From: Octopus sinensis
Taxonomy: Eukaryota
Direction of reading: 5' to 3'
DNA: 6,786 bases
NCBI RefSeq assembly: GCF_006345805.1
Contig: NW_021829205.1
Coordinates: 1-6,786, forward strand
Under the pieces are notes generated by a model. That model was not told the origin of the DNA. It saw nothing but the letters and a program-made list of their open reading frames with translations, and did not search any database. A program made the translations under genes and the position numbers. Within the stretch, counting starts at the first letter, position 1. Every line of letters starts with the position of its first letter. This document shows, in pieces, positions 1-6,786 of this stretch.

Positions 1-287
1 CACTACTTTCCACCGCCGCCACCACCACCGCCATGTTTTAATCATTATCCTTGTGCAAAGACAAAACCTGCTATCTAATACACCTGGAGATTCCATCAAG
101 AAATTCCGAGCGTTTCTCTTGTGGTTGTTGTTGTTGTTGTTGCTGCTGCTGCTGCTACTACTACTACTACTGGTGCTTTGGTTGTTGTTATTGTTTTCAG
201 TTTGTTTTCTTTGTTGCTGACTTTCTCCTTCATCGCCATACACCGTTTACCATTATCCTCATCATTATTAAACATCATCATTACCAT

Positions 288-319
<32 letters not shown>

Positions 320-515
320 CCAAAGAACTTATCATCATCACCATCATCACCACCACCACCGCCATCATCATCAATAAACATCACCACAATCATCATCATC
401 ATCATCATTACCATCATCACAAAAAAAAAAATTCGTTATCATCAACCACATCGGTACCACTTTGAATAACCACTAAAACAATCGCCACTATCATCACTAG
501 CATCTCCATCATCAG
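1..515. repeat. Compound trinucleotide microsatellite / low-complexity block: (CAC)n, (GTT)6(GCT)5(ACT)5, (CAT)n
   Basis: Read directly. It explains the poly-His/Cys/Val/Met ORFs at 51-465 on both strands. Confidence 0.95.
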
Positions 516-1018
516 TCTGGCGGATTGGTAAAAGATCTCTGATCTTGTATTTAAGTAACTTGCAAAAATTGTTAAAGCCTCTTTTCGTTTGTTTCCAATA
601 CGAACTTCTTTTTTTCTTCAGCTGTACACAAATTACATCATTGCTTGTCTTTTTTATTTTGCTTTTTCTAATTTTATTTTTTTTTGCTCCATTTCTATAT
701 GGTCTGCAGCGCTCGAGGGTCTTGCACTTGATAGCAAAATCAGTATCCTGTTCTTTAAAATTCCAGATGTAATTTGAAAATGTTATCACATTCTTCTACT
801 TTGTATGTCTGAAGTAAGTATGACTGAAGTAGCACTGTTTGTTTAAAATTTACCTTCTACCAAACCCACATTATACTTACGCATCATGTTAAGGCTGAAA
901 TCGGTGAAGGGTTTTTGTTGCTAAAATAATTCAATCTAACATATGTGTAATAAGGAATATACATTCAAAATACAAGCTTTTACTTCACACGCACACATAT
1001 GTACATGCACACACATAC

Positions 1019-1032
1019 ACACGTACATGCAC
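1019..1032 (+). repeat. Left copy of the target-site duplication of the CR1-like insertion (ACACGTACATGCAC)
   Basis: Identical 14-mer at 1019-1032 and 1445-1458. The first 2 nt of the right copy overlap the (TAAC)3 tail, so the TSD is 12-14 bp. Confidence 0.85.
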
Positions 1033-1446
1033 GGACACGTCCTACGAAGAAAGGCTGAGGACGCTCGACCTTTAATTCTCTTGAAAAAACCCCGCCGCCG
1101 TGGTGATCTCATTCTCGCCCACAACATCATAAGCGAAAGTGTAACCTCTCGAAAGAGCTGTTCTTCACTCCTGCTCCCGAGCGTCGGCTGCGGGGGTCAT
1201 TCCGAAAAGCTCTACCTGCGACGATTTCATCTCTCAATCGAAGGAGAGGAGCTTTCTCTCCGTCCGGTTGCGGATCCGTGGAACAGCTGCCAGACGAGAT
1301 GGTGAAGATGCCGACGACCACCGCTTTGTTCAAGCCTCCCTGGACCTCAAGTGGCCTGAACTCTTTACATGAACCCACCCTGTACTTAACTCCATGTCCC
1401 CCTACATGGCCTTGCTATTTGCTTTTGAGCCAAGTAACTAACTAAC
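1033..1446 (+). mobile_element. 5'-truncated CR1-like LINE (family A): ORF2 C-terminus, 3' UTR and (TAAC)3 tail
   Basis: GC-rich island in AT-rich DNA. Frameshift-corrected translation is DTSYEERLRTLDLxSLEKxRRRGDLILAHNII...HSEKLYLRRFHLNRRRGAFSVRVADPWNxLPDEMVK...LDLKWPELFT*. This matches the CR1 ORF2 C-terminal pattern (YEERL..L.L.SLE.RR.RGDL...F..RV...WN.LP). Stop at 1370-1372, (TAAC)3 at 1435-1446, flanking TSD. Confidence 0.9.
1034..1372 (+). pseudogene. Frameshifted C-terminal fragment of CR1-like ORF2 (downstream of the RT domain)
   Basis: Pieces fall in different frames (SYEERLRTLDL at 1040-1072; RRRGDLILAHNII and GHSEKLYLRRFHL in ORF 943..1305) and are joined by 1-3 nt indels. Confidence 0.85.
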
Positions 1447-1458
1447 ACGTACATGCAC
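1445..1458 (+). repeat. Right copy of the target-site duplication
   Basis: ACACGTACATGCAC, identical to 1019-1032. Confidence 0.85.
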
Positions 1459-2474: not shown

Positions 2475-2800
2475 ATTAATAAGTAAAGAATAGTTATGAC
2501 ACCATAGTGTAGTATTAAAAAGTATAATATAACTTTCCTCGGAAAGCACGGTTGTACATATGAATCGAGGCCGATATTTCTAGAGCTAAGATATTTTAGC
2601 AGTCTTTCTCAAGCATTCATGAATTTTCAATATGTAAATTACATGTAAAGTTGATAGTTAGGGTGTACACATCGAATCTCATATGGAAAATACAAGAGGA
2701 GATTAAACATACAACGTGAGTCAGTTGCTAGATAAGGTTAAGAAAAAACTGTGACGTTTAAGACATCGAATCAATCAAATGAGAATCTTTGATAAATATA

Positions 2801-2977
2801 GGCGCAGGAGTGGCTGTGTGGTAAGTAGCCCTCTTACCAACCACATGGTTCTGGGTTCAGTCCCACTGCGTGGCACCTTGGGCAAGTATCTTCTACTATA
2901 GCCTCGGGCCGACCAAAGCCTTGTGAGTGGATTTGGCAGACGGAAACTGAAAGAAGCTTGTCGTATATATGTACATA
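2801..2977 (+). mobile_element. tRNA-derived SINE, 5' module only (octopus OK/OR-type)
   Basis: A-box-like TGGCTGTGTGG (2811-2821), B-box-like GGTTCAGTCCC (2854-2864), and a CCTTGGGCAAGT motif resembling the CORE-SINE domain. Near-identical to 2978-3140. The exact family name comes from recognition and was not verified. Confidence 0.85.
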
Positions 2978-3136
2978 GGCGTAGGCGTGGCTGTGTGGTA
3001 AGTAGCTTGCTTACCAACCACATGGTTCTGGGTTCAGTCCCACTGCGTGGCACCTTGGGCAAGTGTCTTCTACTATAGCCTCGGGCCGACCAAAGCCTTG
3101 TGAGTAGATTTGGTAGACTGAAAGAAGCCTGTCGTG

Positions 3137-3191
<55 letters not shown>

Positions 3192-3386
3192 GTGTGTTTG
3201 TGTTTGTCCCCCTAGCATTCCTTCACAACCGATGCCGGTGTGTTTATGTCCCCGTTACTTAGCGGTTCGGCAAAAGAGAGACCGATAGAATAAGTACTAG
3301 GCTTTAGGGTCGATTTGCTCGACTAAAGGCGGTGCTCCAGCATGGCCGCAGTCAAATGACTGACACAAGTAAAAGAGTAAAGAGTA
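2978..3386 (+). mobile_element. Full-length tRNA-derived SINE: head, core, internal (TA)n(TG)n microsatellite, 3' tail ending in (A)AAAGAGT repeats
   Basis: Same head as 2801-2977; microsatellite at ~3135-3196. The 3' region has hairpins GTCGA-tttgc-TCGAC (3309-3323) and CAGTC-aaat-GACTG (3349-3362) and ends with AAAAGAGT-AAAGAGT. Its tail is homologous to the LINE 3' end at 5232-5271. Confidence 0.9.
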
Positions 3387-3987
3387 TACGAAAGACATAT
3401 TGACGATATACTAGTTTCTGAATAAGGCACAAGCACAGCAGCTTTGATAATAATAAGGAAGAAGTTTATAAAACAGTGAGTCTCGAAGCGAATACATACA
3501 AACATGTGAAGTATTGGGTTAAAGGTTCGTGGATATCCCGGGAGTAGCTACCGCCGTTTTAAGGCTCACGGTATTTCGATATGTGAAACGCTATTATATA
3601 TAGCAAAATTTTATATGTATACTTAAACACACACACACATACACCACACCACACATATATAGATATGAAATGCAGAAAACATATGTGGTATTTTATGCTT
3701 TACAATGCATACACGCGTTTCGGTATTTTACTATCAGTATTACACAATTGCTTATGGAAACACTGTTACAATTTTGTCAAACTACCTCTTCAGTGTTCAG
3801 CAAAAAATAAAGATACATAGAATCATGTTAAATACTAAAAAAAAAAAAAAAAATTCCTTCATGCAAATCATCAACAAATACCGCATATATATATACATAA
3901 ATTAGATTAGAGATAAAACCACGATTAGGCAACTCAAACAGTGATAGACATAAACAACAAAAAATAAATACAATTGATATGATATAC

Positions 3988-4099
3988 AAAATATATATAA
4001 AATATAAATTTAAATTATTAAAATTTTAAATTTTAAAATTTATATTTATAAATTTTTATATTTTTATATTTTAAATTTATAAATTAAAATTTTTTTTTA
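3988..4099. repeat. 112-nt tract containing only A and T
   Basis: No C or G between the C at 3987 and the C at 4100. Confidence 0.9.
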
Positions 4100-4557
4100 C
4101 TAACCAAAGTGTATTAAAAAGTTCAATATAATATAAGTTTGGATATACTCCCTAATATTATATATATACTGGTGATAAGAGAATTTAGAAAATCCGAGAG
4201 TGTGAAATAACTCTTTTTAGGAAAGGTGAATCTCGAATCAAGTAATGCTATAAATTGTGCGTGTAAATATAGAGTTGAAGACCCTCTGGATAGTAAAAAA
4301 GCTGAAGGTTAGACATTTGCTGTGTCCCATATCTGAATGATATTTTAAAACTGATATTTATATGTTATTATTTTTAGCTATAATTGCTTCGAGAGTCATC
4401 ATTCCTAAAAAGAATTATATAATATTTAAACATGGACAGGAATACAAGCATTCATAATCGAAAATAGGTTTAGATATATATATATATATCTGTAAAATAA
4501 TATACGTATATACATATATATATAATTCATTAATCGTTGAAGAAATGTTTGCCCTAC

Positions 4558-4655
4558 CTTTCTTTGGTATAACAAAACTGTTGGAGAAATGTGCATACTA
4601 AATACTGAAGGAGAGGCCACTTACCTGAAAAATAAAAGAAAAATATAAGAAAAAA
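4558..4655 (-). promoter_or_regulatory. Candidate recursive splice site (pyrimidine tract-CAG|GTAAGT) with a 67-nt cryptic exon
   Basis: Minus strand reads ttttttcttatatttttcttttatttttCAG|GTAAGT. 25 of the 28 nt at 4655-4628 are pyrimidines and the junction is at 4625/4624. A second donor, AAG|GTAGGG, lies at 4558/4557. No transcript evidence is available. Confidence 0.45.
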
Positions 4656-4721
4656 CTGTTTATGTCCGCAAGAAGTTTTACATAAATTGCTCAGGACAAA
4701 ACGAAAATCTTTCATATAATA

Positions 4722-5208
4722 CTAGCAGTATCGCCCGGCGTTGCTCGGGTTTGTAAGGGAAATAACTATAAAGCATTTTTAGAGAGTTATAGCAAAAAAA
4801 TAGCAAAAAATGCATTAAAAATGGGAAAAAAATGATGGTAAATTTTTTTCTAAATCGTTGACTCATCGTAGACATTTTTAGAGAGTTACTTCCCTTATAT
4901 AATGCGAAAAAAATCAATTAAAATGGAAAAAAAAGATGGTAAATTATTTTAAATCGTTGACACCATCGTAGACATTTTTAGAGAGTACTTCCTTATATAA
5001 TAGCGAAAAATGCATTAAAATGGAAAAAAATATGGTAAATTATTTTTTTAAAATCCTAGACTCATCGTAGACGCGCCCTAATACCCAGAAGGGCTCGATA
5101 TGAATCACTACTATAAGATACCGGTTTTGGTTTAAACTGCAACGCAAAATGTGGGAGTAGTTACGATCTAGATCGTAGGAGACAGAACACAAACTCACTT
5201 TTATATGA
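4722..5208 (-). mobile_element. Non-autonomous Helitron (rolling-circle transposon)
   Basis: The minus-strand 3' end reads CCCGAGCAACGCCGGG (hairpin, 4749-4734), an 8-nt spacer, then CTAG (4725-4722) followed by T. The candidate 5' end is A|TC at 5209/5208. This is the canonical A|TC...hairpin-CTRR|T structure. No Rep/helicase coding sequence is present. Confidence 0.8.
4774..5071. repeat. Three tandem ~100-bp units inside the Helitron
   Basis: Units 4774-4872, 4873-4972 and 4973-5071 each begin CATTTTTAGAGAGT and end CATCGTAGA, and share ATTAAAA(A)TGG and ATGGTAAATT internally. Confidence 0.92.
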
Positions 5209-5209
5209 T

Positions 5210-6786
5210 GATTTTGATTTTGATTTTTCCAGTTTCAGCTAATGAGCTGTGGCCATGCTGGGGGCACCGCCATTTGGTTTGCTACACGGGTTTACCTCAC
5301 GATGCTTTTAGCAAAACGCCATCTGATGCATGAGAGAGTTCGATGCAGCTGCCCTCATCTGCAACTCCTGCCGTGAAGTGGTTCATCCGGGACACCTGAC
5401 AGGAAGAGATCCAGTCCTACTTTAAAGACATCCGCATCTACACCATGGCAGGTCCCTCAGGTTCTTCGGGAGGACATTGAAGAGCCGTGGGCCTCTGAAG
5501 CCCAGGCTATCACAATATCTTGTCCTACATCTTGATGGGCAATTTGGAGTCTTGGTACTACGCAATGGCGTCCGGTTCTGGCGTTTGTATGACTCTCGAT
5601 GCCAAAGTCTGGGACAGACCTTCCAGGATCTTCCAGATATATATTGGCAATCTTTCTCGCCTACGCTCCAGGGAATAGAGCTTTAATCTCTTGAGTCTCT
5701 CCCAGTAGCTGTATGCTGCACAGAGGCTATCTTCTTCGTGTAGCTTCGTTGGATCGCCTCAAGTTCTTGTGATCAACTGACACTGGATGGTGACCATAGC
5801 TGAGAGCAATAGTTAAAGTGGCTTAGGACAAGTGTCTTCCAGAGGACCATCATGGTTTCTTGTTCTCTTGTTCTAAAGGTTCTAAGAATCCATCAGCCAG
5901 CCGTCTGCATTTCATTGTCAGTTTAGCAACATGTACATGAAAGGTCGCGTCATCACTCATGTGAATACCCAGGTCACGCACTGATTGTGCCTCTGGGATG
6001 GCAATCCCTCGGGTCCAGTGTATTCATTGGGTATTGCATTCAGTTTTGCATGCTGATAGTATAAAGCTTGAAACTTTTCAGCATTGAACTGCATGCTATT
6101 CTTTTCAGCCCACTTCTATATTTCGTCCAGCTCACATTGCAGGTTTTAGTGTCTTCAGGGTTCTGTATTGCCTGTGAAACTTTTGTATCATCTGCATAAA
6201 ATTGTGATCGTGGCTCTCCGCGTGGCTGAGGGCATGTCTGAGAGGGCCATTATGAACAGTAGTGGTCCCAAAACAGTGCCCTGCGGAACACCGCTCACTA
6301 TTTGCGTGCTAATGGGAGTGGCCCCATTGGCTGCTACCACCTGACTTCTATTCTTCAGAAAGTCATGAAGCCATTCTCCTAGTTTTCCAACTATGCCAAG
6401 ATCACGCAGTTTGTGACATATCATTCCATGATCGACTTTATCGAAGGCCTTTGCGAAATCGAGATTTCCACATTTGAGTGGTTGAGCAGTTGTTTCAGCA
6501 CCCAGTCATAGTGCTGCAGGAGCTGAGTTAAGCAGCTTCTCTGGTCGGAAAACCATTGTGGTGTCAGGCAGCAAGTCATTTTCTTCAAGGAAGGGATTAG
6601 TTTCCTTCTGACTATTCGTTCCATGACCTTGCTGATGTGTGAGGTCAGAGAGATAGTCTGTAGTTCTTGGCCTCCGCTCTGCTACCTCCTTTATGAATAG
6701 GACATATTTTACCTTCCTTCAGTTTTCTTGGAAGTTTGCCAGCTGCAAGGAAGCTCTGAAAGAGGAACTGCAGTGGTCTTGCTAGG
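5210..6786 (-). mobile_element. CR1-like LINE (family B): RT domain, ORF2 C-terminus, short 3' UTR and (AAAATC)3 tail; continues beyond the window
   Basis: Reconstructed minus-strand protein: ...CPIHKGGSRAEAKNYRPISLTSHISKVMERIV...HGFRPxRSCLTQLL...LDFAKAFDKVDHG...SGVPQGTVLGPLLF...YADDTKV...QFNAEKF...VRDLGI...YCSQLWSP...YWERLKRLKLYSLERRRER...GPRLFNVLP...AAASNSL...VR*. PQG at 6286-6278, YADD at 6198-6187, stop at 5294-5292, tail at 5228-5210. Confidence 0.93.
5292..6786 (-). pseudogene. Frameshifted LINE ORF2 (reverse transcriptase and C-terminal region), 5'-incomplete in this window
   Basis: ORFs 6421..6624 and 6188..6424 are fragments. The RT motifs are in the correct order but are broken by roughly 15 small indels (hand count) and one clear in-frame TAG at 6118-6116. 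Confidence 0.9.

What the first reader, a model, noticed from the sequence alone, without database searches (positions are those of the whole stretch)
4558..4655. Textbook recursive-splicing (ratchet) site with a frame-shifting cryptic exon on the minus strand
Seen: a 28-nt tract with 25 pyrimidines and no AG ends in TTTTTCAG and is followed immediately by a perfect donor, GTAAGT (junction 4625/4624). A second donor, AAG|GTAGGG, lies 67 nt further on (4558/4557), and 67 is not a multiple of 3. The site is in unique, non-TE sequence. A rough estimate at ~65% AT gives on the order of 1e-3 chance hits per window for TTTTCAGGTAAGT, ignoring post-hoc choice and poly-T excess. Established: in Drosophila and vertebrate long introns, YAG|GURAGU sites allow stepwise intron removal and are defined by short cryptic exons ending in a competing downstream donor. 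Inference: the window lies inside a long minus-strand intron that is removed recursively. I am not aware of this being described in cephalopods. Alternatives: an ordinary acceptor or donor, or a decayed plus-strand A-rich tail (it contains AATAAA).
Basis: partly seen in the sequence, partly recalled or inferred. Interest (0 to 1): 0.72.

Follow-up and report, generated by a model that had tools for sequence, protein, structure and literature searches.

The report
Ratchet-type splice motif, function unproven
A stretch of octopus-like, repeat-rich DNA carries a near-perfect "acceptor-then-donor" splice motif of the kind used for stepwise intron removal in flies. Nothing available here shows that it lies in an intron or is ever used, so it is a testable candidate and not a discovery.

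Summary
On the minus strand a 28-nt tract (25 pyrimidines, no AG) runs into TTTTTCAG|GTAAGT at 4625/4624, and AAG|GTAGGG follows 67 nt later. With my approximate scoring matrices this one position is both the best acceptor and the best donor in the window on either strand. The second donor is the next best on the minus strand. Simulations give about 1e-4 to 1e-3 chance junctions of this quality per window, and about 1e-5 to 4e-5 with the second donor. That still means several chance copies in a genome of a few Gb.

Every sequence-level criterion of a fly-type ratchet point with a cryptic exon is met. The decisive criteria could not be tested: sense strand of a long intron, conservation, and RNA intermediates. 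No related sequence was retrievable.

Against an old, selected site:
- The tract is a tandem A-rich 11-mer on the plus strand, similar in style to LINE tails in this window.
- A 9-nt direct repeat brackets the 69-nt piece holding the junction.
- Repeat-like elements lie on both sides: a tandem-repeat block 97 nt upstream of the junction and an inverted repeat about 140 nt past the second donor.

My rough estimate is 0.5 unused look-alike, 0.33 recursive site and 0.08 ordinary exon.

The parts
4645..4649 (-). Branch-point-like CTTAT (yUnAy). The A is at 4646, 21 nt upstream of the AG.
   Evidence: Read from the sequence. This motif is common in AT-rich DNA and carries no statistical weight.
4628..4655 (-). 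Polypyrimidine tract of 28 nt, with 25 pyrimidines and no AG. The nearest upstream AG is at 4657-4656.
   Evidence: Only 0.24-0.58% of window positions reach 22-21 of 25 pyrimidines without an AG.
4619..4627 (-). CAG|GTAAGT: an acceptor and a consensus donor sharing one junction (4625/4624).
   Evidence: It is the best acceptor (13.6 bits) and the best donor (12.8 bits) on either strand of the window with my approximate matrices.
4558..4624 (-). 67-nt segment between the junction and the next donor: the putative cryptic (RS) exon or pseudo-exon.
   Evidence: The length is 3n+1, with stops in two frames. GC is 37%, against 33% upstream and 21% downstream. No protein in the 5.8-billion-sequence set shares words with the open frame.
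4552..4557 (-). Second donor GTAGGG, preceded by AAG.
   Evidence: It scores 9.5 bits, second best on the minus strand. A donor this good within 100-300 nt occurs by chance in 1-6% of cases and followed 3-9% of simulated junctions.
4627..4654 (+). The same tract read on the plus strand: A-rich tandem repeat GAAAAATAAAA x 2.5, containing AATAAA at 4631-4636.
   Evidence: Tandem Repeats Finder. It resembles in style the (AAAATC)n tail of the window's own LINE. The local alignment covers the tail only, and 1-2% of shuffles score as well, a figure that flatters the match because both sequences are low-complexity.
4574..4582 (+). AAAACTGTT, left copy of a 9-nt direct repeat.
   Evidence: With its partner it brackets the 69-nt piece 4583-4651 that holds the junction and ends in the A-rich tract.
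4652..4660 (+). AAAACTGTT, right copy, directly after the A-rich tract (resembles a target-site duplication).
   Evidence: 4.4% of 1000 shuffles of the upstream 600 nt give such a repeat. This is a weak, post hoc observation.

Best explanation
Most likely this is a splice-signal look-alike (a pseudo-exon) that is not a selected element and is probably not used.

How it would have arisen (inferred): an A-rich, tandemly repeated tract of the kind that ends LINE/SINE copies in this genome reads as a strong polypyrimidine tract on the opposite strand. Here it happens to abut CAG|GTAAGT, with a moderately good donor 67 nt further on. The tract and junction may have arrived together as a short retroposed fragment.

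Shown: the motif, its rarity, and its repeat-rich setting.
Inferred: its origin and its lack of function.

The sequence is fully competent on paper. If this strand turns out to be the sense strand of a transcribed long intron, I expect the spliceosome would use it as a recursive site, whether or not it was selected for that.
For: 1. Even the full three-part pattern is expected about 1e-5 to 4e-5 times per window. That is roughly 4-15 chance copies in a 2.7-Gb genome (genome size from my own knowledge). The junction alone is expected 50-450 times.
2. Real-genome baselines agree. Antisense strands of large introns carry 0.07-0.12 ratchet-like sites per 100 kb in all 13 animals studied (PMC2773006).
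3. In large, repeat-rich genomes few motif matches are used:
- In human, 36,870 conserved AGGT sites with strong acceptors yielded 342 with junction reads and 16 with a saw-tooth (PMC6110456).
- In mouse brain there were 19-20 sites in 28,382 transcribed long introns (PMC8797253).
4. The tract is a tandem A-rich 11-mer on the plus strand, similar in style to the LINE tail at 5230-5196.
5. A 9-nt direct repeat brackets the 69-nt piece that holds the junction (4.4% of shuffles).
6. The setting is dense in repeats:
- a tandem-repeat block ends 97 nt upstream of the junction at 4722;
- an inverted repeat ends about 140 nt past the second donor at 4418;
- SINE and LINE copies lie elsewhere in the window.
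7. No exon, coding signal or homologue of the open frame was found.
8. The SINE copies themselves carry GTAAGT donor look-alikes.
Against: - The coincidence is striking within the window. The best acceptor and the best donor of 13.6 kb of strand sequence fall on the same nucleotide, and the next-best minus-strand donor lies at exon-like distance.
- The anatomy matches the fly model point by point (PMC8605326): a short cryptic exon, out of frame, with a donor weaker than the ratchet donor.
- All five invertebrates examined so far, including a sea urchin, show 4- to 22-fold sense-strand enrichment of such sites. If octopus behaves like them, a site this good is more likely real than not.
- The evidence for a retroposon tail is weak and post hoc. 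The 44 nt before the tract match no repeat in the window.
Confidence: 0.5

Rival explanations
1. It is a genuine recursive splice site (ratchet point) with a cryptic RS-exon.
1. The 3' splice site at 4625 and the donor at 4557 define the 67-nt exon.
2. The upstream exon is joined to 4624, which regenerates a consensus 5' splice site (xAG|GTAAGT).
3. This stronger donor outcompetes GTAGGG, so the 67 nt are removed with the rest of the intron.
4. Rare inclusion would shift the reading frame and trigger nonsense-mediated decay.
For: - All sequence-level criteria are met.
- The full pattern is rare by chance, about 1e-5 to 4e-5 per window.
- The features match those listed for fly ratchet points: an exon of about 50 nt, out of frame, with the ratchet donor stronger than the exon donor (PMC8605326). 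They also match those listed for human RS sites (PMC6110456).
- Sense-strand enrichment is 4- to 22-fold in insects and sea urchin (PMC2773006).
- A zero-length exon is harmless in an intron, so even a site born by chance would be tolerated and used.
Against: - There is no evidence that the minus strand is transcribed or intronic.
- No conservation data and no RNA data are available.
- The tract looks like a simple tandem repeat or retroposon tail with flanks resembling a target-site duplication. That argues against an ancient, ultraconserved site.
- The genome architecture is of the vertebrate type, rich in SINEs and LINEs, and in vertebrates enrichment is absent and usage is rare.
- No report links recursive splicing with cephalopods or molluscs, so the base rate is unknown.
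Confidence: 0.33
2. It is an ordinary boundary of a real exon in an unannotated or non-coding minus-strand transcript. Either it is a 67-nt cassette or poison exon (4624-4558) that happens to begin with GTAAGT, or it is an exon ending at 4625 that uses GTAAGT as its normal donor.
For: - Both splice sites of the 67-nt segment score well.
- In mouse brain, 46 of 84 AGGT candidates with junction reads proved to be unannotated exons, against 19 recursive sites (PMC8797253).
- Hundreds of annotated human exons begin with a donor-like sequence (PMC6224609 abstract).
- The segment is slightly richer in GC than its flanks.
Against: - 67 is not a multiple of 3, and only one frame is open. That frame has no relative among 5.8 billion proteins and no Pfam match.
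- An exon ending at 4625 would carry a 28-nt pyrimidine run at its 3' end.
- Exons that start with a consensus donor should be selected against, because they would be skipped.
Confidence: 0.08
3. This is an origin hypothesis and is compatible with the best explanation. The piece 4583-4651 would be a very short, 5'-truncated retroposon insertion in plus orientation, made of about 44 nt of body plus an A-rich tandem tail and flanked by the 9-nt target-site duplication AAAACTGTT. The splice look-alike would then be its antisense strand, as in Alu-type exonization.
For: - There is a tandem 11-mer A-rich tail.
- Tails made of short tandem repeats are seen on both LINE copies in the window: (AAAATC)n at about 5230-5210 on the minus strand and (TAAC)n at 1431-1444.
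- The antisense strand of the window's own LINE tail also gives acceptor look-alikes, at 5233 and 5239 on the plus strand.
- The 9-nt direct repeat sits exactly at the end of the tract (4.4% of shuffles).
- Another LINE fragment in the window keeps a perfect 14-nt target-site duplication.
Against: - The 44-nt body matches nothing in the window, nor the octopus LINE contig L001.
- The tail similarity is similarity between low-complexity sequences.
- The repeat is short, half of it is A's, and it was found by looking for it.
- No repeat library for this genome was available.
Confidence: 0.35

Closest known systems
Drosophila intronic ratchet points with cryptic RS-exons (Hatton 1998 and Burnette 2005, as cited in PMC2773006; Duff et al., bioRxiv 10.1101/006163; Joseph et al., PMC8605326)
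   Same: It matches the consensus (y)nncag|gtaagt perfectly. A short cryptic exon follows (67 nt here, about 50 nt typical). The exon is out of frame and carries stops. Its donor is weaker than the ratchet donor.
   Different: Fly sites are defined by their position in long introns, by ultraconservation and by RNA intermediates. None of these is known here. Fly introns are poor in SINEs and LINEs, whereas this window is full of them. The tract here is a simple tandem repeat with flanks resembling a target-site duplication.
Vertebrate recursive splicing through RS-exons (Sibley 2015, as cited in PMC6110456; PMC6110456; PMC8797253; PMC6224609)
   Same: The site would be recognised by exon definition, with a downstream competing 5' splice site. 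The setting is a large, repeat-rich genome.
   Different: Vertebrate sites are few (19-20 in mouse brain), deeply conserved, and lie in the longest introns of neuronal genes. Motif matches vastly outnumber used sites.
Pseudo-exons, and exonization from the antisense strand of retroposon tails (Alu type; my own knowledge)
   Same: The polypyrimidine tract is the complement of an A-rich tail-like tract. It is followed by AG and a nearby donor, in repeat-rich non-coding DNA.
   Different: No retroposon body could be recognised. The donor that directly abuts the acceptor is not part of the Alu paradigm.

Membership tests
Recursive splice site / ratchet point with RS-exon | AG|GT juxtaposed, with a strong 3' splice site (polypyrimidine tract, AG-free zone, YAG) | tested here: met
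   The tract has 22 of 25 pyrimidines, there is no AG for 31 nt, and it is the best acceptor score in the window.
Recursive splice site / ratchet point with RS-exon | The sequence after the junction regenerates a strong 5' splice site (GTRAGT) | tested here: met
   GTAAGT at 4624-4619. The three exonic positions would come from an unknown upstream exon.
Recursive splice site / ratchet point with RS-exon | A short cryptic exon ending in a competing donor that is usually weaker; the exon is usually out of frame | tested here: met
   The exon is 67 nt. The donors score 9.5 against 12.8 bits. The length is 3n+1, with stops in two frames. Criteria are from PMC8605326.
Recursive splice site / ratchet point with RS-exon | Lies on the sense strand of a long intron (more than 5-10 kb) | not testable with these tools
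   No exon or gene is recognisable in the window. The source contig was not retrievable. Composition skews are contradictory.
Recursive splice site / ratchet point with RS-exon | Evolutionary conservation of the tract and the AG|GT core | not testable with these tools
   No orthologous or related sequence was found. The only 18-mer hit is a chance match.
Recursive splice site / ratchet point with RS-exon | RNA intermediates: saw-tooth coverage, upstream-exon-to-site junction reads, lariats | not testable with these tools
   No RNA-seq access.
Ordinary cassette or coding exon | Frame-preserving length, or coding sequence with relatives | tested here: not met
   67 nt = 3n+1. The one open frame has no relative and no Pfam match. 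A poison or non-coding exon is not excluded.
Retroposon 3' tail with target-site duplication (plus strand) | A-rich or simple-repeat tail | tested here: met
   GAAAAATAAAA x 2.5.
Retroposon 3' tail with target-site duplication (plus strand) | A recognisable element body upstream of the tail | tested here: not met
   There is no alignment to the SINE, to either LINE 3' end, or to L001 beyond the tail. Only repeats present in this window could be compared.
Retroposon 3' tail with target-site duplication (plus strand) | Flanking target-site duplication | tested here: inconclusive
   A 9-nt repeat lies at 4574-4582 and 4652-4660; 4.4% of shuffles give one.
U1 snRNA pseudogene (plus strand ACTTACCTG) | Match to the U1 model beyond the 5' end | tested here: not met
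   No Rfam family reaches its threshold anywhere in the window. The sequence after CCTG is A-rich and does not match U1.

The most novel reading that the evidence does not exclude
Octopus removes long introns through fly-type ratchet points with out-of-frame cryptic exons, and this is one of them. It would be the first case in a mollusc or any lophotrochozoan. It would also show that the invertebrate-type excess of such sites persists in a large genome rich in SINEs and LINEs. That would separate ancestry from genome architecture as the reason why vertebrates lack the excess (PMC2773006).
Probability: 0.3. Interest if true: 0.55.

Novelty: new member of a known kind. Interest (0 to 1): 0.35.

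Why it matters
If the site is used, it extends recursive splicing to cephalopods, whose neuronal genes have very long introns.

It would also address an open contrast. [quoted passage not shown] Octopus is an invertebrate with a vertebrate-like, repeat-rich genome, so it could show whether ancestry or genome architecture decides.

If the site is unused, it is a useful reminder. Even a perfect motif, rare within a window, is expected several times by chance in a genome of a few Gb. Antisense retroposon tails can also manufacture strong acceptor look-alikes.

Tried and rejected
**Retrieving the source contig or its flanks.** Exact look-ups of four window ORFs found nothing on record.

**Relatives of the ORF that spans the site.** No candidate turned up in 5.8 billion proteins.

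**DNA scans.**
- The site and the neighbouring tandem-repeat core gave no hit in metagenome contigs or viral contigs.
- One 18-mer hit in a viral contig has unrelated flanks and is a chance match.

**Taxon.** The LINE reverse-transcriptase ORF gave only 23 distant hits.
- The best, P0001 (69% amino-acid and 67.5% nucleotide identity), comes from run SRR3401912.
- A paper describes that run as an octopus meta-transcriptome.
- This supports an octopod origin but gives no orthologue.

**U1 pseudogene or other RNA gene on the plus strand.** Rfam and ARAGORN found nothing.

**Site as a copy of the window's SINE or LINE 3' module.**
- Only the A-rich tail aligns.
- The SINE and LINE tails do align with each other.

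**Similarity of 4419-4721 to the rest of the window.** Only the (TA)n microsatellite matches.

**Pfam.**
- Scanning the ORFs gave only the RT match RVT_1.

**Composition skew as a guide to the direction of transcription.** The AT skew and GC skew point in opposite directions and are dominated by repeats.

**Helitron reading of the neighbouring block.** The form fits (hairpin, then CTAG, then T), but the hairpin is weak, with z = -1.0.

**Search left unused.** The two already run showed that the collection holds almost no cephalopod genomic ORFs.

Full report
**What is there**

Read on the minus strand, 4660..4550 is AACAG-TTTTTTCTTATATTTTTCTTTTATTTTT-CAG|GTAAGT-(61 nt)-AAG|GTAGGG.
- a 28-nt tract with 25 pyrimidines and no AG (4655..4628);
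- the junction at 4625/4624;
- a second donor at 4558/4557;
- 67 nt between the two.

I also found a branch-point-like CTTAT with its A 21 nt before the AG. The 67 nt are open in one frame and carry stops in the other two.

**Is it more than chance?**

The 9-mer YAGGTRAGT alone is not unusual: 0.20 are expected per window. The combination is another matter.
- The scoring matrices are my own approximations of metazoan splice-site frequencies. With them, this single position is the best acceptor (13.6 bits) and the best donor (12.8 bits) on either strand of the window.
- The donor at 4557 (9.5 bits) is the second best on the minus strand.
- None of the other 32 AGGT sites in the window has more than 18 of 25 pyrimidines upstream.
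- In 9.3e7 nt of order-3 and of order-4 Markov sequence trained on the window, junctions this good appeared 0 and 3 times. That is below 1.5e-4 and about 4e-4 per window.
- A separate estimate multiplies the shuffled 9-mer rate by the tract frequency in the real window. It gives 5e-4 to 1.2e-3.
- A donor of at least 9.5 bits followed 3-9% of simulated junctions within 30-300 nt.
- The full pattern is therefore expected about 1e-5 to 4e-5 times per window.

Scaled to about 2.7 Gb (the octopus genome size, from my own knowledge), this gives tens to hundreds of chance junctions and roughly 4-15 chance copies of the full pattern. Published counts on real genomes agree in order of magnitude: 0.07-0.12 ratchet-like sites per 100 kb on the antisense strand of large introns in 13 animals (PMC2773006).

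**Setting**

The window is repeat-rich non-coding DNA.
- A SINE has its head duplicated in tandem (2798-3123), with its 3' part running to about 3400.
- A decayed LINE with a reverse-transcriptase remnant lies on the minus strand from about 5270 to the right end.
- A LINE 3' fragment lies at 1033-1444 between perfect 14-nt target-site duplications.
- A 100-nt tandem repeat lies at 4799-5072.
- An inverted repeat lies at 4207-4418.

The LINE's nearest relative among 5.8 billion proteins comes from a run described as an octopus meta-transcriptome.

The site sits in about 300 nt that are single-copy within the window. One repeat-like block ends at 4722, 97 nt upstream of the junction on the minus strand. 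Another ends at 4418, about 140 nt past the second donor. No exon, Pfam domain or homologue was found near the site.

**The other strand**

On the plus strand the tract is the tandem repeat GAAAAATAAAA x 2.5 and contains AATAAA.
- Both LINE copies in the window end in short tandem repeats. The antisense strand of the large LINE's tail itself makes acceptor look-alikes (plus strand 5233 and 5239).
- The tract aligns with that LINE tail. Only the low-complexity part aligns, and the 1-2% of shuffles that score as well overstate the significance.
- The 44 nt before the tract match nothing available.
- A 9-nt direct repeat, AAAACTGTT, lies at 4574-4582 and again immediately after the tract at 4652-4660. 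It brackets a 69-nt piece that holds the junction. Such a repeat arises in 4.4% of shuffles.

Together these are a weak, post hoc hint that the tract and junction arrived as a short retroposed fragment. That would argue against an old, conserved site.

The plus-strand ACTTACCTG is not a U1 pseudogene.

**Comparison with what is known**

Fly ratchet points follow the consensus (y)nncag|gtaagt.
- They sit in long introns and are ultraconserved.
- They require a short cryptic exon of about 50 nt that is usually out of frame and poorly conserved.
- That exon's donor is outcompeted by the regenerated donor.
- More than 500 such points are known (PMC8605326; PMC2773006).

Human work lists four features: a long intron, AGGT, a strong 3' splice site, and conservation. 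Of 36,870 sites passing those filters, only 342 had junction reads and 16 showed a saw-tooth (PMC6110456).

Mouse brain yielded 19-20 sites. In the same screen, 46 of 84 AGGT candidates were unannotated exons (PMC8797253).

Sense-over-antisense enrichment in large introns is:

| Species | Enrichment |
|---|---|
| Fruit fly | 21.7 |
| Mosquito | well above 10 |
| Sea urchin | 8.2 |
| Beetle | 8.0 |
| Bee | 4.0 |
| Eight vertebrates | 0.9-1.5 |

The authors link the vertebrate pattern to SINE/LINE-rich introns. No mollusc was included. No held paper connects recursive splicing with cephalopods, octopus, molluscs or squid.

**Weighing**

Every sequence-level membership feature is met. Every contextual one is untestable here: sense long intron, conservation and RNA intermediates. 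The answer therefore rests on base rates that differ about 20-fold between lineages.
- If octopus resembles the insects and the sea urchin, a site this good with a cryptic-exon donor is more likely real than not.
- If it resembles vertebrates, whose genome architecture this window shares, it is probably a look-alike.
- The tandem-repeat tract and the flanks resembling a target-site duplication tilt somewhat toward a young, unselected origin.

My estimates are judgement, not computation:

| Reading | Estimate |
|---|---|
| Unused look-alike | about 0.5 |
| Recursive site used in vivo | about 0.33 |
| Ordinary or unannotated exon boundary | about 0.08 |

The recursive figure includes the case of a chance-born site that happens to lie in a sense intron.

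**Verdict**

If real, the site would be a new member of a well-known kind in a new animal group. The genome-wide sense/antisense count and a look at total RNA-seq would settle it cheaply.

Noticed in passing
window 2798-3400 (+) and 5225-5290 (-): The head of a SINE is duplicated in tandem (177-nt period, 93-94% identity). A (TA)n/(TG)n run follows, then the SINE 3' part. The SINE 3' module (about 3330-3375) aligns with the 3' end of the decayed LINE on the minus strand. This is the pattern expected of a SINE that borrows its partner LINE's tail (I23, 55).
   Followed up: partly
window 1019-1458 (+): A LINE 3' fragment lies at 1033-1444. It has the reverse-transcriptase C-terminal motif YEERLRTLDL and a (TAAC)n tail. 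It is flanked by a perfect 14-nt target-site duplication, ACACGTACATGCAC, at 1019-1032 and 1445-1458.
   Followed up: partly
window ~5270-6786 (-): A decayed LINE with a reverse-transcriptase remnant (Pfam RVT_1, E = 4e-5) has many in-frame stops and runs off the right end of the window. Its nearest relative (69% amino-acid, 67.5% nucleotide identity over 1228 nt) is a contig from run SRR3401912, described in PMC11662614 as an octopus meta-transcriptome.
   Followed up: yes
window 4722-5118 (-): A block built around a 100-nt tandem repeat x 2.7 (4799-5072). On the minus strand it ends in a small GC hairpin, then 8 nt, then CTAG followed by T (4722/4721). This is the form of a Helitron 3' end. 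The hairpin is weak (z = -1.0), the 5' end (A|TC at 5119/5118) is a guess, and no other copy could be found.
   Followed up: partly
window 4207-4418: An inverted repeat with 49-nt arms (82% complementary) separated by 114 nt, resembling a miniature inverted-repeat element. It lies about 140 nt beyond the second donor (I2).
   Followed up: no
window 2821 and 2998 (+): Each SINE copy carries TGTGTG|GTAAGTAG. These are the best donor look-alikes on the plus strand (9.7 bits) and show how repeats spread splice-like motifs.
   Followed up: no
window 1-520 and 3985-4099: A long block of trinucleotide repeats (CAT/CAC/GTT/GCT) lies at the left end. An AT-only, partly palindromic minisatellite lies at 3985-4099.
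   Followed up: no
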